From Hyphochytrium catenoides (Eukaryota; Protista; Hyphochytriomycota), in the NCBI GenBank assembly GCA_900088475.1, contig FLMG01001143.1:1-64000 (forward strand): a stretch of 64,000 bases of DNA, read 5' to 3'. Of the stretch, positions 1 through 63,316 are shown piece after piece. Position 1 is the stretch's first letter, and each line of letters starts with the position of its first letter. Position numbers and translations under genes: made by a program. The notes below the pieces were generated by a model. The model worked only from the letters and a program-made list of their open reading frames with translations. It was not told the DNA's origin and did no database searches.

Positions 1-3000
1 AATCGAACCTCCAGTCAGACCATCAGCTGATGTACGACCTGCACGAACGTCGACCATGCCACCGACGGCATCCATGCTGTCTCCAACAGACAGTTGAATC
101 ATGCCCGCAGAACCGGAGAGAGCGTCACCGGAAGAAAGATGAAAAGCACCTGAGGGCCCTGTCGTGGCAAGACCTGTGCTCACCTCCACTCTGCCACTGA
201 CTCCAGATCCCGCTCGCGCTGTGTAAAGTAAAATGTTGCCACTATTTGAGGCAGTACCTACACCCGAGGATAGCACAACGTCACCACCGTACCCACTTCC
301 GTCTGATGTTCCACCAGCGGACAAATAGATTCTGCCACCAGAACCACTATCCCCTAGGCCAACAGTAACGTCAACATTGCCGCCGTGACCACCGAGCGCA
401 TTACCGGTCCCTAAATCAATCTGTCCTGAGGATCCCTGGCTAGAAGAACCCGTAAAAATCCGTATTCTGCCGCTCACCCCATTTACCGCATCGGGAGAAG
501 ACACCACAACTCCACCACTATTTGCAGATGTTCCAGAACCGGATCTGAGGGCTAAAAGCCCACCACTTCCAGAAGCGGCGGAGGTGTCCCCAGAGATAAT
601 ATTTATAGCACCACCGGTTGACAGGGTACCGGTGCCAACCGATAATGTAATAGCTCCTCCACCACCAATAGTAGAGCCACCTGTGGATAGTATGATCGCC
701 CCGGACGTTCCAAAAGATGCCGAGCCACTGCTAATAGTAATAGACCCGCTCACGCCCATTGTTCCAGCATCAGAACTGCCCATGGTAACATAACCGCTGC
801 TTGTGCCATCACCTGCACCAGAGAAAAACTTAACGTCACCTCCCCAGCTAGTCTGACCTACACCACCCCCAACGGACACAGCTCCTCCCTGTCCGCCGGA
901 TGGCCCGTTACCTCTACCTCCCATCAATCTCACGAGACCGCCTGATGTTCCAGCAGCAGTTGTTACACCTGCTGTGATGCTAACGTCGCCGCCACTGCCC
1001 ACAACACCATCCCCGACCTTTAGCATAACATCACCCCCGGCACCGTCTGCCAGGGATGCGCCTGTAGAAAGGTTAATGGAGCCTGATGAGCCAGCAGAAG
1101 CCGAACCTGTGGAGAGAGAAAGTTCTCCACTGACACCGGTGACGCCGGAATTGGCTGTGCCCAGCACAGTATCGCCACTGTTGCCTAATACGCTTGAGCC
1201 TGACAACAAGGTCAAACCACCACCAGAAGCCACCGCTGATAGCCCACCGTGGATGGAGACAGAACCTCCATCACCTTGAGTAGACCCTTTTCCTTCACCC
1301 CCAGTTAGAGAGATAGGACCGCCACCATAGCCATCGCTAAGGGCTTGACCAGCCTTTATCTCGATGATGCCGCCTTGGCCATTGCCGCTGTCCCCAACAG
1401 ATAGTTGCATTGGCCCACCAGGGCCTGACACGGCTCGGCCGGTCGAAAAAAGTAAAGAACCTGACGAATGTCCTAATGCCAACCCACTGCTTAGTACTAT
1501 TCGACCGCTTCTTCCGTTGTTTCCTGACTTGGCTGTAGAGACCAAAATGTCACCACTGCTTGAACTGGCGCTCGCACCTGAAGATAGGGCAAGGACACCT
1601 CCATACCCAGCGCTGTCTGTTGTGGGTCCGGCTGATAGGTAGACGCTTCCTCCATCGCCAATGTCACCACCACCAACAAAGACTTCCACATTTCCCCCAC
1701 TGCCATTCGCTGCAGTGCCTGTTCGAAGACTTATTTTGCCAGATTTTCCTGCAGCCGCGGACCCAGTATGAACAAAGATATCTCCACTAATCCCAGCTAA
1801 AGCGGTGGAGGATTCAACAGTAACAGTACCACTATTTGCAGAAGTTCCAGCGCCGGTTTTCAGGGTAAGATGGCCGCCTCTACCTGATGAAGCAGTGGTG
1901 TCACCAGCTATTACATCAATGTTGCCTCCGAGTCCATCGTTCCCTTCCCCGACAGATAAGGCAATGCGGCCTCCCGCACCTGATAAGGAACTGCCAGTAG
2001 TAAGAACAATTGATCCGGAAGTTCCTACCGTTGCGATGCCGGTGCTCAACGTCATCCAACCGCTCACGCCTGCTGTACCCGCTTTGGCACTGCCAATACT
2101 CAGGGAGCCACTACTTGACGTAGAGCCCTGTCCGCTAACTACTCGGATACCACCACCCCAACTTGTTTCTCCAACACCACCTTCCAGGACAATCTTCCCT
2201 CCGTATCCGCCATAAGCGCTACTACCCAGACCACCATATAAACCAACAATCCCTCCCGACGATGATGTGGAAGTTGTCAGGCCAGCAGTGAGAGTGACAG
2301 AGCCGCCGTCGCCGGTGACGCCATCCCCTACGCTCAGCTTTATGTCGCCACCGACTCCATCGGCCGTGGCTATGCCGCTTTTAACATAAATGGCTCCTGA
2401 AGTCCCTGAGGTGGCTGCACCGGTAGTTACAGCCAGCTTCCCACTCACCCCTTTTATACCAGCATTCGCCGTGCCAAACGCGGCATTACCGCTACTGCTA
2501 CCAGTGCTGGATCCGGACATTAGCGACATGCTGCCACCGTGATCTACCGCAGACAAGCCTCCGCTGAGATATAGGGAACCTCCGACACCTCCAGTGTATC
2601 CTTCCGCTTCACCGGCATCGATGTATATGGACCCTCCGTCAAAAGCATCGCTCACGGCTCGTCCGGCCCTCAGGCTGATAACACCGCCTGAAGCAGCATT
2701 GCTGTTGCCAACATAGAGATGGATGTTGCCTCCCGAGCCGTATACAGCCTCACCACTGGACATCAAAAGAGAACCCGAGGAACCGCCGAAAGCCGTCCCA
2801 CTACTAATCTCAATGAGGCCACTTGCTCCCGACAACCCCCCCGTGGCAGTGTGGACAAGTATGTTGCCGCTATTCAAGGCTGCACCTTGTCCTGAAGACA
2901 GGAGAATATCTCCCCCGGTCCCAACAGCGTCAGATGTGAAACCAGCGGACATCCGCACACGGCCTCCATTGCCTAAGTTTCCGCGTCCAACGGAAACATC

Positions 3001-4624
3001 AACATGGCCCCCCCTGCCATTGCTGGCAAGACCAGTGTATAGACCAATCATGCCAGAGTTGTCTACGCTAGAGGACCCTGAACGAAGCCAGATTGAACCA
3101 CTAACTCCAGCCATGGCATCAGACGACGCAACCTCCACGTCACCACTATGGGTGGACACTCCAGAACCACTTCGCATTGTAAGACGGCCTCCTGTCCGTG
3201 AGGAAGCAGTCGTATCCCCAGATATGATTTCAATATCACCCCCCACACCAGCGGTGGCTTGTCCAACAAATATTCCGATGGAGCCTCCACTACCAGATAA
3301 GGAGCTGCCTGTAGACAGTACGATAGAACCGGAGGTACCTAATGACGCCACACCACTGCTGAGTGTGAGCCATCCGCTGACGCCCGCAGCGCCAGCATTT
3401 GCGCTTCCTATGGTCACAGATCCACTGCTTGTCATTAGTCCGCTGCCAGTCAAAAAACGAAGAGCACCTCCCCAACTTGTCTCCCCTAGTCCACCATTGA
3501 TCCGCACAAACCCTCCCTTCCCCTCATAAGCGCCACTTCCAAGACCTCCTGAGATTGCGACATGTCCTCCGGACGACACACTTGCAGTCGTAAGGCCAGC
3601 TCTGAGAGAAATACTGCCACCATCACTTACAACGCCATGGCCAACGCTGAGATGGATGCTACCGGCTGCTCCGTCTGCCATTGATGCTCCCGTCGCCAAG
3701 CTTATCAAGCCAGAAGTACCAGAAGAAGCGCTGCCCGAAGCTAGCAAAATTGCGCCACTCACACCAGTCATACCAGAATCAGCAGTCGCTAAAACAGCAC
3801 TTCCGCTGCTGCTATCACTGCTCGAACCTGACAAAAGGGTCACTTTACCACCATAGTCCCCTGCCGAAGCGCCCCCTCGAATCGCAATAGAGCCACCAAG
3901 GCCTTGATTGTAACCCTGAGACTCACCTCCGGTAAGTAGAATCGCTCCGCCATCATAGCCGTCACTCAATGTCCTTCCAGCGGTCACTTCAATGACGCCA
4001 CCGGTTGCAAAGGTACTGTCTCCCACTGAGAGATGAATCATGCCTCCTGAGCCCGACAGAGCTGGGCCAGTAGAAAGAAGCAGTGCACCGGACGAGGAGC
4101 TCGTGGCTAAGCCACTGCTCAGCTCGAGTCGCCCACTACTACCAAAAGCGCCAGCTCGAGCTGTGTGGAGGAAGATGCTCCCACTGCCCAGCCCCATGCC
4201 GCGACCAGACGACAACGTGATGTCGCCACCATAGCCACCATTATCGAAGGTGGTACCAGCTGAAAGATAAACGCGCCCACCATTTCCGGAATCCCCTAGT
4301 CCCACAGCGACATCCACATTGCCTCCTCGGCCGACGACTCCCGTACCCGTCCGAAGCTCGATAGGGCCGGAGCTTCCCTGTGACGATGAACCGGTGTGGA
4401 GATGGATGGCTCCGCTTACGCCGCTTAAAGCGTCAGATGACATCAGGTATATTTCACCACTATTCGCCGAAGATCCATCTCCACTTCTCAAAAGTAGTTG
4501 TCCTCCTGTCTGAGAGGCTGCGGTAGTATCGCCAGCGATAATTCCAATATCACCACCAGTTCCCAGATCGCCCATGCCGACTTTGATTAGAATTGATCCA
4601 CCGGCACCGTTTTCGGCTGCTCCA
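1..4624 (-). repeat. Degenerate tandem super-repeat, period exactly 1314 nt (438 aa), ~3.5 copies, continuing off-window
   Basis: The Gly of the (A/S)GDT(T/S)A motif starts at 4533, 3219, 1905 and 591. The Trp of TSWGG starts at 3474, 2160 and 846. Every spacing is 1314. Confidence 0.93.
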
Positions 4625-7600
4625 NNNNNNNNNNNNNNNNNNNNNNNNNNNNNNNNNNNNNNNNNNNNNNNNNNNCGTGACCCGACCGCTAACACCAGAC
4701 GACCCGGATTCAGCTGACTCTATTGCAATGTTCCCACTTTGACTTATGGCACTATATCCCGAGGTAAGAAAGATAGACCCACCCTTTGCCCCAGAGGCAG
4801 ACGTGGTCCCGCCTAGCAATAAAATATCGCCACCATCGCCATCCAAATTAGCCCCCGACAATAAAGAAATGTCCCCGCCCTTACTGCTGGTTGCTGTCAC
4901 ACCGACCTCAAATGTCACGTCCCCAGCTTTCCCTTGCCCGGCACCGCCAGTTCTAAGGACCACATCTCCCGATGAGGATGCTGGAGCAGACCCTGATACA
5001 AGGTAGATTGAACCACTAACACCAGCCGTACCTCCATTCTCGGTTCTAATGTTGACGTCCCCGCTGCTGGTAGACGACCCATATCCACTTAGTATGGAGA
5101 CTTGACCCCCCGTTGAATATAAGCTATTGCCCGCAGATAAGTAGAGAGAGCCGCCGGCACCCGTAGTGGAACCGCCAACCACGACAGAGACACTGCCAGA
5201 CGATCCACTGTTCGCAGTACCTGTAGTGATGATGATTGCTCCCGAGTCTCCCTGTGTAGTGCTTCCAGTTGTGAGTTTAATGGCACCACTGACGCCAGCA
5301 GTTCCTCCGGCTGCGGTACTGATAGTGACGTCTCCACTACTGGTGCTTGATCCGAAACCACTTGTGATAGAGATGGCCCCTCCTGTAGATGTGTCGGAAA
5401 CTCCACCCTCAACGGAAACTCCTCCAGAAACTCCTACCTTACCACGACCAGATTTGACTAATATTGGCCCACTAGAGTTTGCGTCAGAGTCGCCCGTAAT
5501 GATGCTCACACCACCGCTACTCCCTACTTGACCACCCTTAGCTGTAACGATACGGACATCGCCACTGCGTGTAATGGAAGAACTACCAGAGGTCATTAGA
5601 ATTGAACCTCCAGCGTGCATGCTGCTTGTGCCGCCCGCCGTGATGTAAATGTGCCCACCTGTTGAGGCGCCACTCATTCCAACAGAGACGTTGACATGAC
5701 CTGCCGCTATTGCGCTAGTCCCAGTCCCCAATAAGAGCGGGCCAGAGACGCCGCCGCTTGCCTTGCCTGAGGTTAAATTGACAGCGCCACTCCCTCCCGT
5801 AGCGCCGCCATCCGCACTTCGAAGTGTTAGATCTCCACTGACAGAACGGACAGATGTTCCCGTGATCAAAGACACAGATCCTCCTCTGCCGACGAAGCTA
5901 CCGCCACCTACAATACGTACGGCCCCGCCAGCTGCAGGTATTGCGGTAGTGTCTCCTGCTTGAAGCGAGATATCCCCACCGGTGCTGGACGAAGCTGCTC
6001 CAACAGACAAGGAAATGGCTCCAGCTTTCCCCGTCAGGGCTTTCCCAGTCGTCAAACTCAACGTTCCAGCACCAACTCCGGATCCAGCACCGGTCACTAC
6101 AGAGATATTACCGGATGCGCCTGCTTCGCCTCCATCAGGAGTTGACAGTAGAATGTTGCCACTGCTTCCTCGAGAACTGCGGCCTGAGAAAAGGTTAGTG
6201 GCACCGCCAATTGCATGGGGAGCTCCACCTGCTATTAGCGTAACATTTCCGCCTCGGTTGATTCTTGACATTGTGCTGCCGGCATTCACTACGAATTGGC
6301 TACCTCTAGCGTAAGTGGTACTTCCCAGGTTGAATCTCACATCACCCCCAACGTCATAAACTGAGGATCCTGTTGTGAATACCATAGAACCAGCTCGTGA
6401 AGCTGTCGTATTCCCTGAGGTGAAGGAGATATTTCCTGAAGGTCCCATTGGGGAAGGGGAAGAAAGAAGAGATAGCTCTCCGCTCCCACCTCTGGTACCA
6501 TTACCTGACACGAGCGTTAGACCTCCACCGGCACCCTGAGAAGTTGCGCCGGCCTTCACGGACACTCGTCCGCCATTCCCTTTTGCCGTGTCTCCTACGC
6601 TAATATTGATGTCTCCACTGCTACCGTCAACCGAGGACCCTACTAAAAGAGAGATGCCACCACTTTGGCCCGAGAGAGTTCCACCCGTAGCCAGTGAGAC
6701 GCTACCGCTACCGCCGCTCTTGCTTGCCTCTGGAGTGCGCAAACTGATGGACCCACTGTCCAGCTCTGTAGATGTTCCAGAAGTAAGGGAGATATAACCA
6801 GCTGTACCAAACGAGCTTGTTCCTCCAGTTATCTTGATTGCACCTCCTCTTGCTTTACCAGCACCGGCAGCGAGGTGGACGTTCCCACCGAGCCCTTGAA
6901 GGGCCCCACCGGACGACAACACAATTTGACCCGATGCCGCAATACCGTCACCGGTAGCTACCCTCACATCTCCACTGGAGAAACCGCTTGGGGAAGCGAT
7001 CGTCAGATTCCCGCTCTCCTGTGCATGGCTTTGCCCTGAAAAAATAGTAGTGTTGCCACCTGATTCCTTCATGCTACTGCCTGCGCGTATCATAATCCCG
7101 GACCCTCGCTTGTCCCTACTAGATCCTGCGATAAGCTGGATAGCTCCCCCGAGACCACTAACTGAGTCACCCCCTTTTACTGAAATGGTGCCCGCATCCC
7201 CCGATATGGCATCACCACTCTCAAGAGCAACTCCTCCTGTTTGTTCGCCAGTCTTGGACGAGAGTTTTACAACTCCAGAGCGGAACCGATCACTGGACCC
7301 CCCAGCCATTATAGCCACAGAGCCCCCGTTGGCAGTGGAGGAGCTCCCAGCTACCATTGTGATGCTTCCAGCATGTCTGACCGAATCTCCCACTCGAATG
7401 TCAATGTTCCCTGACGAGTTATGGCGACTTATTCCAGTAAGAAGACTGACGTTCCCTGTGTCTCCCAAATTTGACATTCCCGTCTCGATCGCAATAAATC
7501 CCGTCCTGCCCTCGGTTCCATAGGCAGTTTTGAGGGTCAAATGACTGCTCCCACCATAGGAACTGCGGCCCGAAACTATATTTATGCTACCGCCACCTGC

Positions 7601-10600
7601 CCCGTTGCCACCCATGAGAGACAGAGATCCAGCCGGTCGATGGTGAGCTGCTTTGGAGCTATTACCACCTGCCAAAAGTAGATCGCCAGCTGATGACTGG
7701 AACCCAGAAGCTGTCCCAGTCTTGATCTGTACCATACCAGAGGAACCCATCCGTGATTCGGCAGAAATTATCTTTATGTTACCTGTTGCTACGTCGGAGC
7801 TCCCTGTTGTAACTAATACTGCTCCCGATGGTTGTCTTGGGGAGGAACCAGTCTCAAGCCGTGCTTGACCGGATCTTCCACTGTTCCCGGACGCAGATGA
7901 CACCTGAACTGACCCGCTACCTCCAAACATACTCTTCCCGCTTAGGACTAGAACATCTCCTCCCCCTAGTTTTCGGCCTGCGCCTCCCTTGATGAGCACA
8001 GCTCCGCGCCGCTCTGATTGGCCATCCCCTTCGCCCGCCTCAATGGAGACGCTTCCTCCTGAAGCCTCCGTCGAGAGTGAGTTCCCAGAGGCAATTAATA
8101 TAGATCCCCCCTGTCCATAACTGGAGTTCCCGCTAAGAATCTCAATTGAACCAGAGGGCCCTATGCTTGTCCGACCGGAGCGGAGTAGTAATTTGCCGCT
8201 TGAGGACGACGACTCGCCAGTCTCAACCTTGAGACTGCCTGAGATTGCGGACGCTATTGAGGTGGACAGTTTTACATGGCCTGAATTTAGCCCTGTGCCA
8301 GAACCGAGATTTAAGACTCCACCATCACCTGAGATACTTGATCCTGATGATACATTTACTGACCCTCCGAAACCTCTTTCAGTCAGACCAGCAAAGACTT
8401 CCACTGATGCATAAGGCTCCTTGTGGACCTCAGATTGTCCAGTGGTAAGCCGGATTGCACCTGCAGCGGCTGCTTTTCCTGTCGCTACTACAAATGAGCC
8501 AGAAGCAGTGTACCCGTTTCCGGTTGCCAGCTTGATCACCCCTGACGAACCCCTCTGTGATGCACCTGATGTGATAGACACAGATCCGCCACTTCCGGTA
8601 CCTGAGTTGCCAGAGGCTATCCTCACTTTCCCTCCAGACTGACTCTGCGACATCCCTCCCGTCACATCAACGGCGCCAGCTTCGACAATGGGGGATTGGT
8701 TGTCACCTGCTGCAACCTTGATGTGACCCGATTTATAGGCTTCCGTCGTCGTGGACTCTGTGGAGATTACGATATCGCCGGCACTATCAGACCCTGAAGA
8801 TGCTTTCACCATGACCGACCCAGAGCGGGAGGCTCGTCCAGACTCCAAATTAAGATCGCCGGAAGCACCTCCATAAGCAATACCAGATCGCAAGATTATT
8901 GTGCCGCTGGCTGCAGCTTTAGACCCAGAATTGCCTGTAGACATAAGTAGGTCTCCACTTTGTCCTTCCTTGGCCGACCCGGAGCGCAAAGTCAGCGTCC
9001 CGGAGCTCGTCATGGCAGGTCCGCTTGAAAGGCTAACGATCCCGCTATCCCCGCGACTGCTGCTGGCCGACTCAATTAGTACAGGGCCAGAAGCTTGCAA
9101 GCCTGGTCCGCTGCTGGTGGCTACCTTTCCGCCGACTTGAGTTCTGCTTCCTCCTGCGTTAAGGAGTAGATCGCCACCTCTTCCTCTCCGAGCAGCTCTA
9201 TTGGTTGATTCTCCTGCACTAATGAGAACTAGCCCTCCGGATGCGCCAGAGGCAGAACTCCCCATCACCTTCAAAGTTCCGGGACGCTGCGCACCACCAA
9301 CACGAAGCAGCATATTCCCTCCAGTGCCATCTTGAGCATGACCAGTTTCAATAGAGATAGTGCCACTGAGCGCTGCGGTGCCCGACTGGATTTGTATAGA
9401 TCCGCTGCTCAGGGTATCATTGGCAGAGGATAATGTAATCCTTCCAGAAAAAGAGCCTCTTTCGCTTTTGCCCGACACTAGAACAACGGAACCACCGCTG
9501 AGACGGCCAGATCCACCCCTTAATTCTGCGTCCCCTCCCTGGCCGGCGTTGTCTAGACCAGCTCCCCCAAGAAGCTTGACCTTGCCGCCAATATATCCGG
9601 CATTTCCTGCAGCTATAGCTACAGTGGAACCAAGCGCAGAGCCGGAATGCCCAGAGCTGATTCTTACCTCCCCACTATTGCCCTTCGTCGAAGCTCCTGA
9701 GGAGATATGCACATTTCCGGCCCTCTCTCCCTCAGCAGCGGTGTTACCAGAACTTAAAAGAAGCCCACCGCCTCTCGTGTCTGATTTCCCAACTCTGATG
9801 TAGATGGATCCGGAACCATGATAAGCAGGTCCGGTGGAGAGCTGTATGCTACCGCTTCGCGTCGCTCGCCCGGTGGACAATGTTAAGCTACCGGAGTTAT
9901 CCAAACCGCTACCGGACCCAAGATTAACACTTCCAGAGTCATGGCGTGAAGTGCCTGATTGAACTTCTATCGCGCCACTTTTATCCGAAGCGTCACCTGT
10001 CAAGAGGGATACACCGCCACCGTTGCCGTTCGATGAGGCGCCCGCGGTCATTTTGAACAACCCACCATTTAACGCTCCTGAACCAGCAAGTAGGTGAACA
10101 TCACCTCCTTTGCCTAGATTGGAGTTACCTGAGGCAACCGTCACCGAACCTGCCCCTTCAGATCTTGATTCACCAGCCGACAGATATATAGAGCCTGAGG
10201 TGAAAGAAGACCCAGTATGGGCAAGGATGTGACCACTTTGACCAGAGGTACCATTGCCTGTCAGCAGAACCAGGCTTCCTGACTCAGCGCCGTCTCCTGA
10301 CCCTAGCAGCACCTCCCCAGACATGTAATGTTCATTATCTCCTGATCTGACACTCAACCTTCCAGATGTCATTTCTAGGCCGAGCCCGGAGGAAATCATA
10401 ACTCTTCCTCCTTCATGGCCATCGCCAGACGACAAAAGCAGACTTCCACCTCGGGAGCCAGAGCTTTTTGCGTTACCAGAAGATAGGATCACTGCTCCAG
10501 GGGCATCCAGGGCATCACCAGAGCCTAACACCACAGGTCCGGAGCCCAGGTGCCCGTAACTGCCCCTAATAAGGATGCCTCTCGCAACCCCACGCTGTGA

Positions 10601-19600: not shown

Positions 19601-22600
19601 CCATTCCCCGAGTTAGTTCCAGCTTTGAGAGTCAAAGAACCTGCGACAGACAAATCAGAAGCGCTATCTCCTGCTTGAACCGCAATATCTCCACTTTTGG
19701 CGTCAGATGACCCTGAAGAAAGAGTTACAAGGCCCGTAGATCCGGCGCCATGTCCCGTCCCAATGCTTAAATCTCCTGAGTGAATGCTGTTGGAACTCTT
19801 GATTCGCACTGAGCCACTAGATAGAGTCCCGGTCCCGGAAGTAATAATTACGTCACCTCCTGTACTATATTCAGAACGGCCGCTGCTCAGCTCCAGGTCA
19901 CCTCCCTTATTATCTGAGGATGAGCCTGTGGAGGCCCCTGCTAATATCCGTAGAAGACCACCGCTAGTTGTTTGGGATCGTCCAGACTGGATGGAAATAT
20001 GACCTGCTTTACCTTTTGTGTTCCCAGTGCTAATAGAAACTCCGCCAGAAGACCCCAGTCCATGACTGTCTCCGGTAGATAGCTCGACAGGTCCAGACAT
20101 TCCACGTTGGGATGAGCCACTGGTCAGTACCAGATGGCCCGAAGTACCCACATTTCCGCCGGTAGATATTGAAATATGGCCCCCCGCATCATCTGCCGAC
20201 TTCCATTGCTCGTTGTCAGAACCAGACGTAGAAATTCTAATTGAACCTTGACTGCCAGCAGCGAGGCCGATATCAGAGCCAAACCCATTGCCTGTGGTGA
20301 GTTGAATAAACCCGGCACCGTCACCAGTTGGGCTGTCCGCTGTGGACAGCCGGATGGAGCCAGAAGGACCATTGATAGCCGACCCAGATAAGAGTTCCAG
20401 GTCCCCTGACTGTTTCTCCGATATCCCTGACTTAACCGTAATCGCGCCAGAGCTACCTTCTCCTGTGGTGGAGGTTGACATAGCGATACGGCCAGAGCCA
20501 TGACTTGCCTGTCCTGATACTATCTCAACCGCGGCAGCATCATCTCCCTCCCCAAGTATAAGGTGAGCACTGCTAAGTGAAGAGTCAGCTCTCCTTAGTC
20601 CGCTCGATAAGCGTATTGAGCCTCCTGCGTCTGACCCACTACCGCCAATCACTTGAACGCGGCCACCTTGATCGCCGAGGCTACGGCCTGCTTGCAGAGT
20701 CAGACTGCCTCCTATCTCCCGACCGCTTGTGCCAACGCTGATTGAGATACCTCCACCGGAAGAGTGGCCCCGACCGCTGTGTAGATGTATGGGCCCACTA
20801 GAACCAAACTCAGATGAACCAGTTTTCAACGCAAGGTGACCCGTTCTCGTCCCTGGTCCGGAATGGTGCACCGACTTAGCTGATTGGATGGTCACAGCTC
20901 CACTTGACGTAATGGCATGCCCAGACTCCATATAAATGGAGCCGCCTTGAGGTCCTTGAGATGCACCAGCCCGAAGGTCCAGTTTTCCGCCTTCTCCCCG
21001 TCCAGACCTTCCGGCTGAAAGGATGACGTTTCCTGAAGAGTCGAAAGCTGATTCACCACTTGAGATTTGAACCATTCCAGTGTTGCCTTTCGAAGGACCA
21101 GTTCGAATATGAATGGAGGAGGATTCGTAAGCCGAGGCCCCAGTCTGGATATCAATTGTGCCGCTACGAGCGGTCTTGGAGACACCGCTTTGGATCCTCA
21201 CCGCACCACCGAGGTGACCAGAGAAGGAGGAGCCAGCCATTACCTCTATGGAACCTGGAACGTTGTATTGGCTGCTACCGGCAGCAAGAGAGACAGACCC
21301 GGCAATGCCCCGAGTGGAGTTCCCAGATTCAAGAACGACTTCGCCTGTGCTGCCAAGGGTAGCTTTACCAGACCCAACTCTCACTCTCCCGGATATGCCC
21401 TCTTGACTGTCGAGAGGAGCAGAAGTCATGCGAATCTCGCCTGAATCTCGTTGTCTACCCGAACCAGACAGGAGGAATACCGAGCCAGGCTGCCCATCAA
21501 CTGTAGACCCTGCACTTAGCAACACTCGTCCACCCCGGCCTTTTGCGCTTTCAGACGTTCCAGCATAGAGTGTCAGATCACCTCCCTTACCTTGAGACCC
21601 CCCTGCGGTAAACAGAAAGGACGATAAAGTTGAGTGGAGCCAAGAGCCTAAGAAGCGCGATAACGACAAACTAGCTCACCTTTTACTTGACCTGCACTTA
21701 TTATCACGGATCCAGCTTGTCCTTCAGCAGATAGGGAACTACCAGCCAGCAAAATGGCGTCACCCCCTCTTCCTAAATCGCTATCCCCACCTTGTAGCCG
21801 AAGAAGTCCTCCGGATGAGGCCTTTGCGGCTCCAGCGTGAAGGAGTACGGACCCTGACGCTTTCGAAGCCTTGCCACTTTCTAAAGATAGAGAACCACTG
21901 TTACCTTCATGCGATACCATAGTGCTAAGGGATATGCTTCCCGAAACGCCTTCCGTCCGACTTCCACCAGAAAGGAGGCTGATGCCACCTCCAAGTGACC
22001 TCATGCTTGAAGATGATGAGCCAGCTCGGATGGTGACACTCCCGCCTTTTAGACCGCCAGTCGCGCCGACATTCATAGTAATACTCCCAGACTGTTCTCC
22101 AGATCGCCCAACTTCAAGCATTAATGATCCGGATCTTGCTCCGTCTGCTTTGCCTGTTCTGATATTAACCATGCCACTTGGACCTGAATGAGGTTGATCG
22201 CCGCTGGCAAGTAAGACCGTGCCTCCGCCACTCTGCTGGCTAGTGCCACTAAGGATACTAATGGCACCGCCAAATCCTCCGACCGAAGAACCTGCCCGAA
22301 TAAGGACCTTGCCTCCTATACCAGAGGCAAGACGAGTAAGCAATAAGGTTTATTCAACCCAGGAAAACAGTACCCACCTTCGGATCCACTTTGAAAGCCC
22401 GCGGTATCTCCAGCTTGCAGGTTGATGCCTCCACCATGTCCACCACCAAGACTGCCTTTGTAGCTATTGTGCCCAGCGCGGATAGACACTTCGCCCGCCT
22501 TAGCAGGTGCATGAGTAATCCCAGCTTGAAGCTCGAGTACCTTGCCCTCGCTAGATTCTGAAGCCCCGGATTTGATTCTAATGCCAGCAGAGCCCTGTGT

Positions 22601-25600
22601 AGCACCTCCAGATCGGCCTGTCTCCAGGGTGATAGCCCCAGCGTTTGCTTCTGAAGAATCTCCTGTCTTAAGCAAGAGCGATCCTGACTGCGACCTCTTG
22701 GATGTAGATGGCACGGATAATATGGTCACGTTTCCGCTGCCACCACTGTCACTTTTACCGGAAAGAATGAGGATGGATCCTCCATCTCCAGAACTTGCTT
22801 CTCCGCCTTCCATTGTAATGCTCCCACCTCGAGATCCTATTCTCTGATGACTTCCACTTCGTCCTCCAGTCAGTCGTATATCTCCTCCGATGGAGCTTGC
22901 TGTGACGGTACTTGAAAAGCTGGTTCCGCCCGTAAGTGACACAGAACCACCTTTACCCGTCTTACTATTGGCAGTCCAAAGGTCCCCACCGCGAAGGTTA
23001 ACGCTTCCACCTACAGCGCCACTCCCAACTCCGACGTCAAGACTGATCTCCCCACCGCTTCCGTGTGTGCTTGGACCCGTTGATAAACGAATGCCGCCAG
23101 AAGGACCAGAATTGCTAGTGCCAGTGGCCATTTTGATGCTGCCACTAGAGCCTTTAAGGCCCCCCCGTTCTGTTCGTAGAGATATAGAGCCAGAAGTGCC
23201 CTTTGTACTTCCTCCGGATACAATATTGACGGAACCACCTGAAGCGCCTCCTCTTGCTTGGCCACCTTCAAAGAGAACATCGCCACCCATTCCTTCTTCA
23301 GAAGGCCCTACGGTAAAGGTAAGGTTACCGGCGCTGGCTCCCTTCGCCTCACCAGTTTGAAAGCTTAGTGACCCTGACGGAGCGGAGCGAGATGCCCCAG
23401 TGGAAAGGGTAACGTCTCCACTGCGCCCCCGGATCCCAGCGTCAGCAGACGAGATGAGAATGTGACCACTGGTGGTTGCCTCTCCAAATCCTGAGAGGAT
23501 TCGGATCTGACCTCCTTTCCTCTTCCTAGCATGACCACCAACAATGCGAACATCTCCTCCATTATCACCCGGTCCACCCCCCATGGCTGCTCCCCCGAAG
23601 AAAGCTAGAGCTCCTCCACGTCCTCCCGAGCCCCAGTGGGGGTGAGTGCCTTGACCAGCCTGGAGAATAATTCCACCTCCAACAGCTCCTTTGCCTAGGG
23701 CTTCCCCTCCTTCAAGAAGAATTTGCCCTCCATCTCCCATTGCACCTAGCAAATTGAATGTGGAGTGTGTACCATCAGAGAGAGAATAACCAAAGCAATA
23801 GAACGGTAACTCACCTTGGCCAACCTTAAGGCTGATTCCGCCACCGGGCCCCCCAGCAGAGGCACCTGTTTCCAGACTCAAGGCTCCTGAGGGACCAATT
23901 GAAGCTCTTCCGGTAAGAAGTGCTGCTTTGCCACTTGGTCCGCTTTCTTCCATGGAGTCAGCAGTCATCAATTGCAAATCGCCAGATCCATGGGGGCTGG
24001 GGCCCGTCAACAGAGAAAGATGACCCCCAGGAGAAGAATGATCGGATGTGGGGCCTGCCTTAATGGTGACCGCCCCTCCCTCCCCTACAGTCCCTCTGCC
24101 AGAAGCGATTTCTATTGTGCCACCACGCCCAGAATCAGCTTTGCCAGTCCGGAAGGCGATACTCCCACTGCTGCCACCCATAGATCGTCCAGTTCGCAAC
24201 GTGGCGGAACCACTACTTCCAGTTACGCTAGAGTCTTCCGTGAGCAGGGCAATAGACCCTGTAGTACCTATCCTGCTCCCACCTGAAGCAAGTCTAATAG
24301 ATCCACCATAACCTGCTCCTGCTATCCCCCCTTGTAACTCTATATTACCGCCATTGTCTCGCCCAGAGCCACCTCCCAGGGCTTTACCTCCGATAAGAAG
24401 CACACTTCCGCCATCTCCACCATCAACGGCACTTTCACTCTCCCCGTCGCCTCCGCTAATGCGTACTTTTCCTCCTATCCGGCCTGGGTAAGAGCTCGCT
24501 CCGGCGGAGATGTCAACAGTTCCTCCATCCAAGTATGATGCAGATCCGACGCTGAGCTTAATGTCCCCTCCTCGGCCAGCAAAAGAATCGCCGGTCCCCA
24601 GTGTTATAGTCCCTGAGTGGCCCGCTTGCGATACGCCTGTGGTAATAGCCACTTGGCCACTGGCACCGGAATCCCCTGCAGCTGGACTTCCAACGGTGAT
24701 GGACCCGCTAGAACCAACAGTGCTCTTGCCCGAGAGGACTTCGACAGGCCCCCCAGACCCCACTGCTGCCTCCCCTCCATAGAGCAGAACCTCACCCGCA
24801 TTATTATGCACATGATTACCCCGGGCACTACCTCCCTTCAATAGTAAACCCCCACCACTTCCACCGTTTGCTTCATCAGAGCTGCCGCCATTCCCTCCTA
24901 AAATTGCGACCTTTCCACCAGCTCCTCCTGGGGCTGAAGTCTCACCAGCTTCTAGACGGACCCAACCTGCAATTGAAGGAAAGCAGAGCCGGTAAGAAGT
25001 CTTGATCGTTACCATACCTTCGAACTTCTCTTACCTCCATCCCTAGATGACGCTCTGCCTACTGCCAAAAGGATTTCTCCTGCCGAGCCTCCACCAGCTT
25101 CACCTGTGGCTAAGAAGAGTGGTCCCGAGCCTCCATTTCGGCTCTCTCCACTGCCAAGGAGTACCCGCCCACTGTGTCCTAATCTTGTCGAGACTGCAGA
25201 GGTGATACTGATGTCACCGCTTTGACCACCAAACATGCTTGGGCCACTGCTCAGCCGGAGATGGCCCCCCGTAGCCGTCTCAGATAATCCTGCAGTAAGG
25301 ATCACGTCGCCGCCAGGTCCGTCCTTTGAAGTCCCAGACGTGATGGAAACAGATCCGGCCTTCTGAGAGCCAGAGGTATTCCCAGCTGCAATAAACACGT
25401 TCCCTCCGGATCCTGATGACGCATCGCCACCAAGCAATCGAACGGCACCTCCATTGCCGCCATCCGCAACACTGGCCCCCGAAGCTATTAGAAGGTCACC
25501 TCCTGAGGCTTCAGATGCTTGGCCCTGGGTAAGGACTATGGTTCCTGGTTTCCCCATATTAGTGGATCCTGTAGATAACAGAATGTCTCCCGAGCGCGTC

Positions 25601-27840
25601 CGGCCATTCCCTGAGGTAATCATAATTGGACCTGAATTACCATGGATAGATGGCGCGCTTGCCAACTTGACCGCCCCGCTGAATCGCTCCCCTGCGCCAC
25701 TCATAATCTCCACATTCCCTCCATCAGCAGCGTCGAGAGTTGTACCACCAATGATCGTGGTGGAAGCCCCTTTTCCCTTACCACTAGTCCCCGGTTCAAG
25801 GGAGATAGTACCACTCGAGCCACTCTGGGTTGGACCAGTCTGAATTGTGATCCGTCCACTAGTTCTCGCAGTAGGGCCGGAACTCAAGGTGATAGCGCCG
25901 CTTACTTGCCCAGCGGAGGCAGCTGACGCAAGAGTAACATCACCGGATGGTCCAATATCAGATAAGCCAGAGTACAGCTCCAAAGCCCCACCCTTCCCTT
26001 CCTGACTTGCACTTCCAGCTTGGAGCATGAGTATCCCACCTCGATGGGTGCCGCTGCCACCTTTCAACGAGAGTGAACCGCCTTCTCCAGAAGAATGAAT
26101 GACGGCATCTCCCGCCTGAAGAGTAATACTGCCACCGAGGCTGTTAGAGGATGAGTGTCCGCCCATGAGGGCAATCGAGCCGACTTCATCGCCCGACCCA
26201 GACCTCACAACGATTTCACCGGACCTTTCGGCGTTCGCAGAGCCCGTTTTAATCAAGAGTGAGCCGGAAGAAGCTTCCGCATTCCCCGTGCTAACTAGGA
26301 TCATGCCCGACGTTGCTGTGCTGGAACGGTCAGTGAGGAGAAAGATACTCCCACTACCGCTGCTTCCTTCCATCGTTGAAACCTCAACATGACCAGCGCC
26401 ACCGTTTTTGGATCCACCAGAATAAAGCTTGAGATGGCTTCCAGGTCCGTCCAAAGTCTCTCCTACACGCATTGAGATTTCCCCGCTACGGGTTGTGGCC
26501 TGTCCACTCGATAATGTAATACTTCCCGATTCTTCAGCAGCACCAATGCCAGTCTTTAGGAGCAAGGGCCCGCTGGAACCTCCCAGAGAGGAGGCGTCGG
26601 CAGATCCAAGCCTGACTTCCCCTGTGCCTCTTCCCCCAATCCCCGATTCCAGATACAACGGGCCTCCGAAGCCCATATTGCTACGGCCACCTCGCAGAAT
26701 GATACCGCCTCCAGTTCCAGATATTGCCTCACCGCCCTGCATCTTAATATCACCGCCGCTCCCTGAACCCTCTGTACCTTGCCGCCCATTTCCTCGTCCA
26801 CCGCTGAGCATTATCTCTCCCCCTTTTCCCCCGTTAGTGTTGAGACCGTTACCTGCAGCCACCATAATCAAGCCTCCAGCTTTGTCCATTTCTGTAGAAT
26901 CTCCTGATCTAATCTCTACTTCTCCGGCGCTAATGGCTTTGATGGCGTCCTCGGTGACACTAAGCTCAAACGTCTGCCCGGTCAAATCTTTCTGGCCTTC
27001 AATAAATAGAAAAGACAGAGTTTCTTTATGTAAGAACTAAAGCTTGCGACGGTCGAAATTGTTGGCACCTACCTTCGACCACAAGTTCTCCACCGCCATA
27101 AGAAGGATCTCGAGACACATGTAAGTTACCCTCAACGTGTTGAACTGGGAGAAGGGCAATCGGAACCGAGCAGCAATTACTACTTCAGAGCACCGCTCAA
27201 AAAACACCAGCCGAAGGGCCATTACCTTTTAGCAGAGAGCTGGGGCAGGGAGGTTCAAACACTGTAGCCCCGCAGGTTTCATAGTAAGTTTCCTCGAGGG
27301 CCAAACACGTCCTCTTCCCTGCACACCATGCGCAGTTACTGTTTTCCACACAGTCTCCACAGGACCTTAGGACTTGACATTGAGGCACCACTACGATATC
27401 GATTGAGATGTGTCAAACAACCAAGCAGGCGGCTTCCATGGCAACAAAGCGCAGAAGCTTACCTGGACACAGCACTTCCTCTCCATATAACCACTCTTCG
27501 GTAGGGCATCTCGTGCTAGTTTGCGAGGGACCATCCTGGTTTCCCTGAGTGCACTTCAGCGTAGCCAGACAAAATCCGCAGCCAGGAGTCGAGATACATG
27601 GATGACATAGTCCAACGAGATCCCTACGCATGCGTACCAACACAACAGTCAGAGTATAACACAACCGTGGGCTAAGTAGTCTACCTACCAGTACCCACTC
27701 CCTGACGCTTCAACAGATGTTGAAAGTTGTGAACAGGCATCCTGGGGTGCAGAGGATACTCCTGTCACCCCCAAGGAGGGCAAGAAAGCTGCTAAGAAAA
27801 AGAAAAGCGGCAGTCCGGCCAAAGCTCGCATGGCTCTCAT
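1..27840 (-). CDS. Giant secreted Gly/Ser-repeat (beta-solenoid/fibre-like) protein with 2 N-terminal PSI domains and an internal Peptidase S74/MYRF-type intramolecular chaperone; 3'-partial
   Basis: ATG 27840 gives MRAMRALAGLPLFFFLAAFLPSLGVTGVSSA (signal-peptide-like). Introns read by eye: 27624-27688, 27391-27462, 27145-27225, 26997-27072, 24967-25034, 23746-23814, 22316-22377, 21603-21679, 12710-12768, 12118-12182. These join the listed ORFs (25009-26985, 22316-25015, 21648-22343, 13150-21669, 12753-13199, 12175-12672, 4550-12154) into one repeat protein. After the gap, an unlisted stop-free frame runs from 4623 to base 1 (GAAENGAGGSILIKVG...GMVDVRAGRTSADGLTGGSI). Continuity across the two N-gaps is inferred, because the nominal gap lengths do not preserve frame. 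Confidence 0.85.
12360..12663 (-). other. Peptidase S74 / MYRF-like intramolecular chaperone autoprocessing domain
   Basis: P|SDRRIKEDIEDMD...YRYSETW...RGVIAQQLREVFPEHV...FHEIDTQALLVDVMAGLQ matches the SDxRxK...Y.Y...GVIAQE...PEAV signature. The Ser codon is at 12661-12663. Confidence 0.9.
27226..27623 (-). other. Two tandem PSI-like (plexin/semaphorin/integrin) Cys-rich domains of the giant protein
   Basis: Exon 27463-27623 encodes CHPCISTPGCGFCLATLKC...RCPTEEW...LCP. Exon 27226-27390 encodes CQVLRSCGDCVENSNCAWCAGKRTC...TCG...PCP. Both show the CxxC-x5-CxW/FC-x5-C pattern. Confidence 0.8.
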
Positions 27841-62574: not shown

Positions 62575-63316
62575 TGCGTGGTTAAGCAACCAACTGGTTG
62601 GTGATTGAAACAGGCAAATGAGCCCAGACGACTGAGTCACGGCAAGCTTCAGATAATCGTCTCGTCCGGTGAGGCGATGGCGCCACTATCCTTGAAGCCT
62701 TTATTCTTGAGTGCGTCCTAGGCCGCTGACCTTCCTCCTCTGAGTAAAGGCCTTTACTTTCTTGTCGACAGATTCTGAGGTGTGGGGCCAGCGCAGAAGT
62801 TTGGACCAGCTTCGCGCCTTCTTTTTCGTCTTCTACCCTAATATAAGGAAGCTTGAATTATAATCGGTTAGGACCTCTAGTTTTGGTAAATAGCTCAACT
62901 CTGTCTACTGAGAGCTGATTGAGAGTACAGTAGTGCCACAAAAAGTATTCTCCGCCGCAGCACTTCGTCTTACAAGGACTGTCAAAGCGGTTATTGATTC
63001 GTAATCTCGGCTATATCCCTGCTGTAAGCTGACCATTCGGACAGTCCCTGGAAAAGAGCCTTACCGTTACCGGTACGGCATGGCCTTGTTGTTCCCACTG
63101 CGGAAAAGTGAAGGGAAGCGGGATGTTGGCCCTAGTTGGGCAGCAGGCTGGACGTGATGAGTCTTCGTCTGGAAGCTTCGCAACGCATCCTTCCAAGGGC
63201 ATCTTCCCATATCGTGTGCCTTCCTCCTCCATGCTGCAGGGTAGAAACTGAGGTTAATAGCCTTAAGGAAAAGATCCTGTTATACTAGGTCTACAGCTGG
63301 CAGGGGGCTGGGCATA

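What the first reader, a model, noticed from the sequence alone, without database searches (positions are those of the whole stretch)
1..27840. A >9,000-aa secreted, phage-tail-fibre-like protein in a eukaryote: PSI heads, two giant Gly/Ser solenoid arms and a central self-cleaving chaperone
Seen: a signal peptide, 2 PSI domains, ~4,650 aa of ~15-residue repeats (G-x-hydrophobic-x-hydrophobic-x-x-G then a Ser/Gly turn), an S74 domain, then >4,000 more aa of the same repeat type. The repeats are essentially Cys-free and no TM segment is visible in the window. Established: S74/ICD domains drive trimerisation and triple beta-helix folding in phage tailspikes and MYRF. Inference: a secreted homotrimeric beta-helical fibre. 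At one 0.48-nm rung per ~15-aa repeat, ~600 repeats would give a rod of roughly 0.3 micrometre or more. It could form a surface hair, tether, adhesive thread or extrusome filament. I know of no characterised eukaryotic protein with this architecture.
Basis: partly seen in the sequence, partly recalled or inferred. Interest (0 to 1): 0.92.

Follow-up and report, generated by a model that had tools for sequence, protein, structure and literature searches.

The report
Giant stramenopile fibre protein with phage-type chaperone
A stramenopile genome carries one enormous secreted gene (over 9,000 residues visible) made of a new 15-residue repeat around a phage-tail-fibre self-cleaving chaperone domain. 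It belongs to an undescribed family shared by oomycetes and heterokont algae that probably builds long trimeric extracellular filaments.

Summary
On the minus strand, 27840 to 1, a GT-AG-spliced gene with at least 10 introns of 59-81 nt encodes:
- a signal peptide and two 8-Cys PSI domains;
- about 4,500 aa of 15-residue repeats;
- one Peptidase_S74 domain with its Ser-Lys dyad intact;
- at least 4,000 more aa of the same repeat, still open at base 1.

About 9,012 aa are visible. The arms contain no Cys and no TM segment.

Both N gaps change the reading frame as written, which says nothing because gap lengths are estimates. Gap-free orthologous loci show the same PSI-arm-S74-arm order. Sequence style is continuous across gap 2.

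The gene is not unique. It belongs to a family found in oomycetes (Phytophthora infestans PITG_01491, Aphanomyces, Achlya), ochrophyte-like genomes and marine metagenomes. I found no description of this family. Some members carry 3-4 S74 modules, some of which lack the catalytic Ser.

The S74 fold is confirmed against MYRF and phage chaperone structures. The repeats match no Pfam, PHROG or NCBIfam family. The cellular role is unknown.

The parts
27689..27840 (-). Exon 1: start codon (27840), signal peptide, and the first Cys of PSI-1
   Evidence: It holds the only strongly hydrophobic stretch in the protein. Donor GTAGGT at 27688.
27463..27623 (-). Exon 2: PSI domain 1 (8 Cys counting the one in exon 1; CHPC and CGFC motifs)
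   Evidence: Pfam PSI E 0.012, 16.3 bits on the exon alone. Cys pattern.
27226..27390 (-). Exon 3: PSI domain 2 (8 Cys; CGDC and CAWC motifs)
   Evidence: Pfam PSI E 8.7e-6, 26.4 bits against a 23.1 cut-off.
27073..27144 (-). Exon 4: short linker (VQHVEGNLHVSRDPSYGGGELVVEG), conserved in orthologues
   Evidence: The matching segment in L001 is 'ENRVVGNLLVEADPLWGGGRLVASG'.
13258..26996 (-). N-terminal arm, about 4,500 aa of 15-residue repeats. Exons: 26996-25035, 24966-23815, 23745-22378, 22315-21680, 21602-13258. Introns: 25034-24967, 23814-23746, 22377-22316, 21679-21603.
   Evidence: No Pfam, PHROG or NCBIfam match.
13201..13257 (.). Assembly gap 1 (57 N). The frame changes from 1 to 2 across it.
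   Evidence: Continuity is inferred from the gap-free orthologous loci L001, L002 and L008.
12769..13199 (-). Exon 9: the last repeats plus the non-repeat beta region that precedes S74 (...GVNFRFQKDR)
   Evidence: It aligns to the pre-S74 region of 40+ relatives. That region is modelled as beta-strands in orthologue P0123.
12183..12709 (-). Exon 10: Peptidase_S74 intramolecular chaperone domain. Nucleophile Ser codon at 12663-12661 (TP|SDRRIK), Lys five residues later. The first C-arm repeats follow.
   Evidence: Pfam 51 bits. MYRF ICA 7dc3 by sequence, E 1.4e-5. The orthologue model matches 7dc3 at TM 0.68, rmsd 2.5 A. PHROG tail-fibre families. Ser codon.
4676..12117 (-). C-terminal arm, part 1: 2,480 aa of the same repeat
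   Evidence: Charge content falls from about aa 7000 onwards.
4625..4675 (.). Assembly gap 2 (51 N). The frame changes from 0 to 1 across it.
   Evidence: The 400 aa before the gap resemble the sequence after it (247 bits) more than any other part of the protein (195 bits or less). The low-charge composition spans the gap.
1..4623 (-). C-terminal arm, part 2: 1,541 aa of repeats. The ORF is still open at base 1, so the C-terminus is not in the window.

Best explanation
This is one very large secretory gene of a stramenopile. It encodes the precursor of a long homotrimeric extracellular (or vesicle-lumen) fibre.

**Shown:**
- The architecture: signal peptide, 2 PSI domains, about 4,500 aa of 15-residue repeats, one S74 domain, then at least 4,000 aa more repeats.
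- An S74 domain with the MYRF/phage chaperone fold and an intact Ser-Lys dyad.
- A repeat period conserved across distant relatives.
- A family conserved from oomycetes to ochrophyte-like genomes.

**Inferred:**
- In the ER, three chains are brought into register by the central S74 module. This module nucleates folding of the flanking Gly/Ser-rich beta-repeats into an intertwined, triple-beta-helix-like rod.
- The S74 module then cuts its own chain before Ser (TP|SDRRIK). This releases a PSI-tipped N-terminal fibre of at least 4,850 aa per chain from a C-terminal piece of at least 4,180 aa that keeps the chaperone at its N-terminus.
- Relatives with 3-4 S74 modules suggest a polyprotein logic in which each fibre segment has a chaperone at its C-terminal end. 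The window's C-arm may therefore end in another S74 module beyond base 1.
- Expected rod length is about 0.15-0.3 micrometre per arm, depending on the geometry.

**Cellular role.** Because the family spans the stramenopiles, the most likely role is a conserved stramenopile surface filament. One candidate is the fine filaments of the flagellar hairs. This last step is speculation.
For: **Gene model and size.**

**Domains.**

**Repeat statistics.**. The 15-residue period is kept in eight loci whose GC content runs from 41% to 68%. Internal repeats are only about 30-35% identical, with no DNA-level tandem repeats. The period is therefore old and under selection.

**S74 domain.**
- Sequence match to MYRF ICA, with Ser and Lys aligned.
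- D, R, I and K are nearly invariant in 47 relatives. Ser is present at the nucleophile position in about 90% of modules.
- The AF2 model of the 52%-identical orthologue has an S74 core with pLDDT above 90.
- That model matches MYRF ICA 7dc3 (E 1.7e-7, TM 0.68, rmsd 2.5 A), endosialidase ICD 3gw6, GA-1 3gud and T5 pb1 4uw8.
- Sequence matches to phage tail fibres.

**Arms need partner chains.**
- The repeats have pLDDT 65-89 but no DSSP secondary structure in two monomer models. DSSP did assign the S74 core in the second model, so the tool was working.
- The only structural or profile neighbours are triple-beta-helix or fibre proteins. These hits are weak, and the PDB ones are not significant. 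HylP1 6x3m has E 6. VgrG has E 0.24. Three uncultured phage proteins have E 1e-4 to 8e-3 at 23-26% identity.

**One gene across the gaps.** L001, L002 and L008 show PSI-arm-S74-arm with no gaps in that span. One search supports continuity at gap 2.

**Polyprotein logic.** L001 has 3 S74 modules and L005 has 4 in a single 5,040-aa ORF.
Against: - No trimer model or experiment was possible.
- The repeat model has only moderate confidence (pLDDT 65.6, pTM 0.50). All PDB-based triple-beta-helix similarities are statistically insignificant.
- In phage fibres the chaperone sits C-terminal to what it folds. Here at least 4,000 aa lie after it, and the Tara relative L003 has at least 5,300 aa after it with no second S74. 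Folding of the C-arm is therefore not explained by precedent.
- The C-terminus is unseen. A membrane anchor or other domains may exist there.
- There are no expression or localisation data for any family member. PITG_01491 was not found in the RNA-seq supplements I could read.
- Both gaps are out of frame as written.
Confidence: 0.55

Rival explanations
1. Same gene and same S74 function, but each arm is a single-chain beta-solenoid or beta-roll with one 15-residue coil per 0.48-nm rung. Three such rods would lie side by side, as in the heads of trimeric autotransporter adhesins.
For: The 15-residue unit has two inward aliphatic positions, one small position and Gly at three corners. From my own knowledge, this resembles 14-15-residue single-chain coils such as the YadA head or the spruce budworm antifreeze protein. 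The hydrophobic period is strictly conserved.
Against: AlphaFold usually finds single-chain solenoids in monomer mode. Here two models gave the repeats no DSSP strands at all, at pLDDT 65-89. There was no Foldseek match to any single-chain solenoid. There was no Pfam match to YadA, FhaB, pectate-lyase or hexapeptide families.
Confidence: 0.2
2. The arms are flexible, heavily glycosylated Gly/Ser-rich polymer. This would be a mucin-like gel, an adhesive or a storage protein such as the >400-kDa Lpv glycoprotein of Phytophthora large peripheral vesicles. S74 would be the only folded, cross-linking element.
For: Gly plus Ser make up about 40% of residues. The repeat model has only moderate pLDDT and no secondary structure. 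Phytophthora does store an uncloned-in-full glycoprotein of over 400 kDa in vesicles (PMC3869178).
Against: - The alternating aliphatic pattern and near-invariant Gly positions are kept in repeats that are only 30-35% identical, and across loci from 41% to 68% GC. That is not how disordered linkers evolve.
- There are few N-glycosylation sequons: 39 in 9,035 aa.
- From memory of Marshall et al. 2001, which I could not check here, Lpv genes are built of near-identical 534-bp tandem repeats. No 534-bp periodicity exists in the P. infestans orthologue or in the window.
Confidence: 0.1
3. A MYRF-like tethered release device. The unseen C-terminus carries a membrane anchor. The protein stands on the cell surface as a giant stalk, and S74 cleavage sheds the PSI-tipped distal half.
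For: The central position of S74 mirrors MYRF, and MYRF is the closest solved relative. A signal peptide is present and the C-terminus lies outside the window.
Against: No TM segment appears in about 9,000 visible aa. No further S74 module and no end of the arm appear in at least 5,300 aa after S74 in L003; TM segments were not examined there. None of the fetched loci reaches a C-terminus. Multi-S74 relatives fit segment production better than a single release event. This reading overlaps the best explanation rather than excluding it.
Confidence: 0.1
4. Artefact: the three gap-separated pieces are separate or mis-joined genes, or a decaying pseudogene.
For: Both gaps are out of frame as written. 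The assembly is gapped in exactly this region, and P. infestans T30-4 also breaks here.
Against: There are no stops in about 27 kb of coding sequence. All 10 introns are canonical. The flanks are open right up to each gap. The same domain order is seen gap-free in L001, L002, L005 and L008. Sequence style is continuous across gap 2.
Confidence: 0.04
5. The gene is viral cargo, from an integrated giant-virus or polinton-like element, rather than a host gene.
For: S74 proteins occur in algal giant viruses. One example is a 1,529-aa beta-helix plus S74 protein in a Heterosigma akashiwo virus genome assembled from metagenomes (bioRxiv 10.64898/2026.02.06.704369).
Against: The gene has ten spliceosomal introns. 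Its neighbours are ordinary host genes (ALDH, Orai-like, GMPP-like, LRR). It is conserved across oomycetes and ochrophyte-like genomes. No relative was found in IMG/VR with the family's conserved motifs.
Confidence: 0.02

Closest known systems
MYRF (myelin regulatory factor) ICA / Peptidase_S74 domain, PDB 7dc3
   Same: It is the closest solved relative by both sequence and fold. The S74 domain is internal rather than C-terminal. The Ser-x4-Lys dyad is conserved. In MYRF this domain trimerises the protein and cuts it in two.
   Different: MYRF is a membrane-bound transcription factor with an NDT80-type DNA-binding domain on the cytosolic side. The window protein has a signal peptide, PSI domains, no DNA-binding domain and about 9,000 aa of beta-repeats.
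Phage tail fibres and tailspikes with a C-terminal intramolecular chaperone (K1F endosialidase 3gw6, T5 L-shaped fibre pb1 4uw8, GA-1 neck appendage 3gud)
   Same: The chaperone fold is the same. There are sequence matches of 31-35% identity to T5-like fibre genes and to PHROG tail-fibre families. The chaperone sits directly after a Gly-rich repetitive fibre.
   Different: Phage proteins are about 0.4-1.5 k aa with the chaperone at the extreme C-terminus, where it is discarded. Here the fibre is 5-10 times longer, continues after the chaperone, is eukaryotic, spliced and secretory, and uses a repeat not found in cultured phages.
Uncharacterised stramenopile 'Peptidase S74 domain-containing' proteins (P. 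infestans PITG_01491, Aphanomyces astaci, Achlya hypogyna, Nothophytophthora; unnamed loci L001-L009)
   Same: These are true family members. They share the pre-S74 region, the S74 domain (up to 53% identity) and the 15-residue arms. Where the N-terminus is visible they also share the PSI start.
   Different: - All are fragments or split gene models, and none is characterised.
- The N-arm measures about 1,950 aa in L001, 2,250 in L008 and 3,050 in P. infestans, against at least 4,700 aa here.
- S74 copy number varies from 1 to 4.
Triple-stranded beta-helix proteins (T4 gp5C/VgrG spike, streptococcal phage hyaluronidase HylP1)
   Same: They are the only PDB neighbours of the arm model and arm profile, though not significant. 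Their strands are short, Gly-cornered and 7-8 residues long. The chain has no intrachain sheet when modelled alone.
   Different: There is no significant sequence or structural match. Known examples are tens to a few hundred residues long, not thousands.
Heterosigma akashiwo virus beta-helix + S74 protein (HaVMAG_contig_3_1, 1,529 aa)
   Same: It combines a long beta-helical region with a C-terminal S74 domain, in a virus of a stramenopile alga.
   Different: It is viral, much shorter and annotated as FhaB-like. Its S74 domain is terminal. I made no sequence comparison, and no IMG/VR relative of this family's S74 was found.

Membership tests
Peptidase_S74 / intramolecular chaperone domain (PF13884) | Profile match above Pfam's gathering score | tested here: met
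   51.0 bits against a cut-off of 22, E 1.8e-13, full profile 1-58.
Peptidase_S74 / intramolecular chaperone domain (PF13884) | Catalytic Ser-Lys dyad (Ser, then Lys five residues on) | tested here: met
   The motif TP-S-DRRI-K is present. Ser and Lys align with the MYRF 7dc3 positions. Lys is at least 90% conserved in 47 relatives and Ser about 90%.
Peptidase_S74 / intramolecular chaperone domain (PF13884) | Chaperone fold | tested here: met
   Tested on the 52%-identical orthologue P0123, not on the window protein itself. Core pLDDT is above 90. Foldseek gives 7dc3 at E 1.7e-7, TM 0.68, rmsd 2.5 A, and also 3gw6, 3gud and 4uw8.
Peptidase_S74 / intramolecular chaperone domain (PF13884) | Trimerisation and autoproteolysis | not testable with these tools
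   This needs a multimer prediction or biochemistry.
MYRF family | NDT80-type DNA-binding domain N-terminal to the ICA domain, and a TM segment after it | tested here: not met
   Pfam finds only PSI and S74. The N-terminus is a signal peptide. There is no TM segment in the visible about 4,180 aa after S74.
Triple-stranded beta-helix fibres | Three chains intertwined, each contributing alternate strands to three shared sheets | tested here: inconclusive
   Monomer models show no intrachain sheets at pLDDT 65-89. The PDB matches to HylP1 and VgrG are not significant. No trimer model was possible.
Single-chain beta-solenoid adhesins (YadA-head, FhaB/haemagglutinin, pectate-lyase-like, hexapeptide) | Profile match or a single-chain solenoid model | tested here: not met
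   No Pfam, NCBIfam or PHROG match for the arms. No DSSP strands and no solenoid Foldseek hits.
Phytophthora Lpv (large peripheral vesicle glycoprotein) | Gene built of near-identical 534-bp tandem repeats (from memory of Marshall et al. 2001; not verifiable here) | tested here: not met
   There is no excess of k-mer self-matches near a 534-bp offset in the P. infestans orthologue or the window. TRF found nothing. A direct comparison with AF315064 was not possible.
PSI (plexin-semaphorin-integrin) domain | A module of about 50 residues with 8 Cys, matching PF01437 | tested here: met
   PSI-2 scores 26.4 bits against 23.1. PSI-1 scores 16.3 bits on a partial query but has all 8 Cys once exon 1 is joined.

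The most novel reading that the evidence does not exclude
Stramenopiles inherited a phage-type fibre-building module and scaled it up. The result would be a polyprotein that its own S74 modules trimerise and cut into micrometre-scale triple-beta-helix filaments. These filaments would form a conserved extracellular structure with no assigned protein so far. One candidate is the fine terminal or lateral filaments of the tripartite flagellar hairs that define the group.
Probability: 0.15. Interest if true: 0.9.

Novelty: new variant of a known kind. Interest (0 to 1): 0.72.

Why it matters
MYRF is the only eukaryotic use of the phage intramolecular chaperone domain that I found characterised, and MYRF is a transcription factor. 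This family would show the same domain doing its original job, building a trimeric fibre, inside a eukaryotic secretory pathway and at 5-10 times the size of phage fibres.

The family is conserved from crop and fish pathogens (Phytophthora, Aphanomyces) to algae and open-ocean plankton. Even so, it is split or truncated in every assembly I examined, and I found no paper that mentions it.

It offers three things:
- a candidate for unassigned stramenopile surface filaments;
- a new 15-residue beta-repeat for structural study;
- a natural test of whether a centrally placed chaperone can fold fibre on both of its sides.

Tried and rejected
- **Pfam, PHROGs and NCBIfam on the arms.** No match.
- **tblastn of a 450-aa arm segment against 50,697 phage records.** No match.
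- **Word-indexed homologue search with the 2,781-aa exon.** Only 4 hits, because low-complexity words saturated the candidate list. The same search with the S74 exon gave 9 unnamed fragments.
- **Tandem Repeats Finder on the window and on L002.** Nothing. TRF stops at period 500, so I also ran a k-mer offset histogram. It showed no 534-bp signal and only a single 2.7-kb duplication in P. infestans.
- **Lpv as the known identity.** Rejected on repeat structure, with the caveat that the defining feature comes from memory.
- **Literature.** I searched S74/PF13884/'chaperone of endosialidase', S74 + oomycete, PITG_01489-01492, the assembly accession, mastigoneme terms and Lpv. No paper on this family turned up. 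A 2026 P. parasitica zoospore-vesicle preprint does not mention it.
- **P. infestans life-stage RNA-seq supplements.** The gene IDs are not in the stored, truncated tables.
- **IMG/VR scan with the family's S74 motifs.** No relative found.
- **A second in-frame intron candidate at 19446-19387.** Rejected, because removing it breaks the 15-residue register.
- **Organism names.** I could not obtain names for assembly GCA_024449685.1 (L001) or for the window itself.

Full report
**1. What is in the sequence**

The feature lies on the minus strand. Long stop-free stretches (675, 904, 233, 2,841, 168, 182, 2,549 and 1,573 codons) follow one another from 27.9 kb down to base 1. They are joined by nine short GT-AG introns of 59-81 nt, each at the point where the running frame meets stops.

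A tenth intron is in frame and stop-free, so it was hidden inside an ORF. It lies at 23814-23746 and is 69 nt long (GTGAGT...TGCTAG, GC 0.41). Removing it restores the 15-residue register exactly and deletes the only Cys in the repeats.

With this model the visible protein has 4,671 + 2,800 + 1,541 = 9,012 aa, about 0.86 MDa, with no stop and still open at base 1.

**2. Domains**

- The N-terminus, MRAMRALAGLPLFFFLAAFLPSLG..., is the only strongly hydrophobic stretch in the protein.
- Two 8-Cys PSI domains follow. PSI-2 is above Pfam's threshold. PSI-1 is below it only because the exon-level query lacks its first Cys.
- Next come a short conserved linker and about 4,500 aa of repeats.
- One exon (12709-12183) carries Peptidase_S74 at 51 bits against a cut-off of 22.
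- An HMM of the whole S74 module finds it only once in the window.
- At least 4,000 aa of the same repeat follow S74.

**3. The repeat**

The consensus is [SG]-G-x-[IVL]-x-[LIV]-x-[ST]-G-x-[SAG]-x-x-G-x. A strict motif finds 536 anchors with a modal spacing of 15. Hydrophobic autocorrelation peaks at 15, 30 and 45. Gly autocorrelation peaks at 7, 8 and 15.

The copies are old. Long internal alignments are only 30-35% identical, and there is no DNA-level tandem or dispersed repetition. The arms match no Pfam, PHROG or NCBIfam family.

**4. The gaps, tested first**

Gap 1 (57 N) separates frame 1 from frame 2. Gap 2 (51 N) separates frame 0 from frame 1. Read literally, both are out of frame, but gap lengths are estimates, so this decides nothing.

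Three observations favour one gene:
- Both flanks of both gaps are open right up to the Ns, on the same strand, with the same repeat.
- The 400 aa before gap 2 resemble the sequence after it (247 bits) more than any other part of the protein (195 bits or less). A shift to low charge begins about 500 aa before gap 2 and continues beyond it.
- Related loci show the same order without gaps (see section 5).

Continuity is therefore likely but not proven.

**5. Host and relatives**

*Host.* The neighbours are ordinary eukaryotic genes: an aldehyde dehydrogenase, two Orai-like genes, an LRR protein and a GMPP-like fragment. The best named ALDH relatives are a brown alga (Choristocarpus) and a xanthophyte (Tribonema) at 56-59% identity. 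The host is therefore a stramenopile, probably an ochrophyte. I could not identify the species.

*Family size.* An exhaustive HMMER search with the S74 exon found 357 proteins at E <= 1e-3 and 111 at E <= 1e-10. Most align over the entire 175-aa exon and into the repeats. All named ones are oomycete 'hypothetical' or 'Peptidase S74 domain-containing' proteins: P. infestans PITG_01491, Aphanomyces astaci and A. euteiches, Achlya hypogyna and Nothophytophthora.

*Loci fetched around relatives:*

| Locus | Source | Architecture seen |
|---|---|---|
| L001 | unnamed NCBI assembly, no Ns | PSI end, 1,584-aa arm, three S74 modules, at least 1,500 aa more; runs off the contig |
| L002 | P. infestans T30-4 | PSI, about 3,000-aa arm (annotated as a separate 2,616-aa gene), S74 (PITG_01491), about 1,900 aa more, then a 5.7-kb gap |
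| L003/L004 | Tara Oceans | S74 followed by at least 5,300 aa of arm |
| L005 | GC 68% | one 5,040-aa ORF filling the locus, with four S74 modules |
| L007/L008 | metagenome contigs | PSI, about 2,250-aa arm, S74 |

The 15-residue period holds in all of them. None reaches a C-terminus.

**6. The S74 module**

- By sequence, the nearest solved structure is the MYRF ICA domain (7dc3, E 1.4e-5). The window's TP-S-DRRI-K aligns to the MYRF cleavage motif.
- In 47 aligned relatives D, R, I and K of this motif are at least 90% conserved. Ser occupies the nucleophile position in about 90% of modules.
- The window's module spans an intron, so I modelled the 52%-identical P. infestans orthologue with a 47-row alignment. 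Mean pLDDT was 81, and above 90 through the S74 core.
- Foldseek returned MYRF ICA (E 1.7e-7, TM 0.68, rmsd 2.5 A), then the endosialidase chaperone 3gw6, GA-1 3gud and T5 pb1 4uw8.
- The exon also matches T5-like L-shaped tail fibre genes at 31-35% identity and ten PHROG families, nine of them tail-fibre families.

Membership in the S74 family is established on sequence, dyad and fold. Trimerisation and cleavage are inferred from what the family is known to do.

**7. The arms**

- A 450-aa arm segment, modelled as a monomer with 27 in-register paralogous and orthologous segments, gave pLDDT 65.6 and pTM 0.50, with no DSSP secondary structure.
- In the second model the arm residues after S74 had pLDDT 76-89 and again no DSSP elements. 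The same run assigned helices and strands to S74 and to the pre-S74 region, so the absence is real for these models.
- PDB neighbours of the arm model are only chains of the triple-beta-helix phage hyaluronidase HylP1 (E 6-10, not significant).
- The best PDB hit of the arm profile is the VgrG beta-helix (E 0.24, not significant).
- Among predicted viral structures, three uncultured tailed-phage proteins match at E 1e-4 to 8e-3 and 23-26% identity.

I read this as weak but consistent evidence that the chain adopts an extended conformation needing partner chains, as in a triple beta-helix, rather than a self-contained 15-residue coil.

The 8 + 7 spacing of Gly fits two short strands per repeat. 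That would give about 0.96 nm per repeat, or about 0.3 micrometre per arm. This geometry is my inference, not a result.

**8. How it most likely works**

*Shown:*
- secretory entry;
- the PSI tip;
- two very long arms of a conserved beta-type repeat;
- a central chaperone-protease with an intact dyad;
- family conservation.

*Inferred:*
- The S74 module brings three chains into register in the ER lumen.
- It nucleates folding of the adjoining repeats.
- It cuts before Ser (codon 12663-12661). This yields a PSI-tipped N-fibre of at least 4,850 aa and a C-piece of at least 4,180 aa.

*The multi-S74 relatives.* In L001 only the first of three modules keeps Ser (SSDKRIK, against TADERIK and PDDTRIK). 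In L005 modules 2 and 4 are canonical (PSDRRIK), while modules 1 and 3 lack both Ser and Lys. This looks like a polyprotein in which some modules cut and others only hold chains together.

*The open point.* It is unclear how at least 4,000-5,300 aa placed after a chaperone would fold. Either another module lies beyond base 1, as in L005, or the chaperone can seed folding in both directions.

**9. Biological role**

Nothing here localises the protein. The family is shared by oomycetes and ochrophyte-like genomes. That points to a structure common to stramenopiles, and the fine filaments of tripartite flagellar hairs are an obvious unassigned candidate. Cyst or spore coats, adhesive threads and vesicle contents are alternatives. 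I put about 0.15 on the hair idea.

The Phytophthora Lpv storage glycoprotein (>400 kDa; PMC3869178) was considered. It is unlikely on repeat structure, with the caveat stated in the membership table.

**10. Comparison and novelty**

The protein works like a phage tail fibre with an intramolecular chaperone, and its topology (internal S74) is like MYRF. It is a member of the S74 domain family. It is not a MYRF family member, because it has no DNA-binding domain and sits on the lumenal side.

The repeat is unclassified. I found no paper describing the family. S74 proteins of algal giant viruses exist, but no viral relative of this subfamily was found.

I rate it a new variant of a known kind: an ICD-assisted trimeric fibre in a eukaryotic, giant, two-armed or polyprotein form.

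**11. Limits**

- No multimer prediction, no access to model coordinates, and no named proteomes for a presence/absence profile.
- The window's species and the gene's C-terminus remain unknown.

Noticed in passing
window 23746-23814 (minus strand): An in-frame, stop-free 69-nt GT-AG intron is hidden inside the long ORF. Read through, it inserts 23 non-repeat residues that include the only Cys of the arms. ORF-based annotation would miss introns of this kind.
   Followed up: yes
L001:9884-15301 and L005:2-15121: Relatives carry 3 and 4 S74 modules in one ORF. Only some keep the nucleophile. L001 has SSDKRIK, then TADERIK and PDDTRIK. In L005, modules 2 and 4 read PSDRRIK, while modules 1 and 3 lack both Ser and Lys. 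L005 modules 2 and 4 are identical over 60+ residues, which points to a recent duplication of about 1,180 aa.
   Followed up: partly
L002 (P. infestans T30-4, DS028119.1:1906220-1927568): The orthologue is annotated as at least two genes: a 2,616-aa model plus the 392-aa PITG_01491. The S74 ORF is in fact open for 1,952 codons and runs into a 5.7-kb assembly gap. The locus also holds one duplication of about 1 kb at an offset of 2,718 bp.
   Followed up: partly
window 58702-59124 (+) and 63317-63907 (+): Two Orai-1-like (CRAC channel) gene fragments (Pfam E 3e-10 and 1e-9) flank an aldehyde dehydrogenase gene on the opposite strand (60094-62640).
   Followed up: no
window 30201-30272 and 30273-30740 (-): A third assembly gap (72 N) directly abuts a GMPPB-like hexapeptide-repeat fragment, so that gene is probably truncated by the gap.
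   Followed up: no
window 27463-27623 and 27226-27390 (-): Each PSI domain contains two CXXC motifs (CHPC and CGFC; CGDC and CAWC). This is the arrangement reported to give the MET PSI domain disulfide-isomerase activity (PMC9604360, abstract).
   Followed up: no
window 19258-19506 (-), about aa 2612-2694 of the N-arm: This is the one stretch of the arms with clearly lower Gly/Ser content (...NSPAIMMNAEGTAAQGRIELTSLDSLGDKGAARLVLGEDRNSSSIIRMETT...). It is not an intron and does not match the pre-S74 region. It may be a hinge or a break in the rod.
   Followed up: partly
window 1-7500 (-), from about aa 7000 onwards: The distal C-arm has about half the charged residues of the rest (DEKR 8-10% against 13-15%). 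It also shows a weak higher-order period of about 62 and 77 residues.
   Followed up: partly
L003:3-7247 (Tara Oceans scaffold): In this relative the arms contain many Cys (48 and 66 in the two long ORFs), unlike the Cys-free arms of the window, L001's C-arm and L005. Its S74 domain is split by an intron just after the SDSRIK motif.
   Followed up: no
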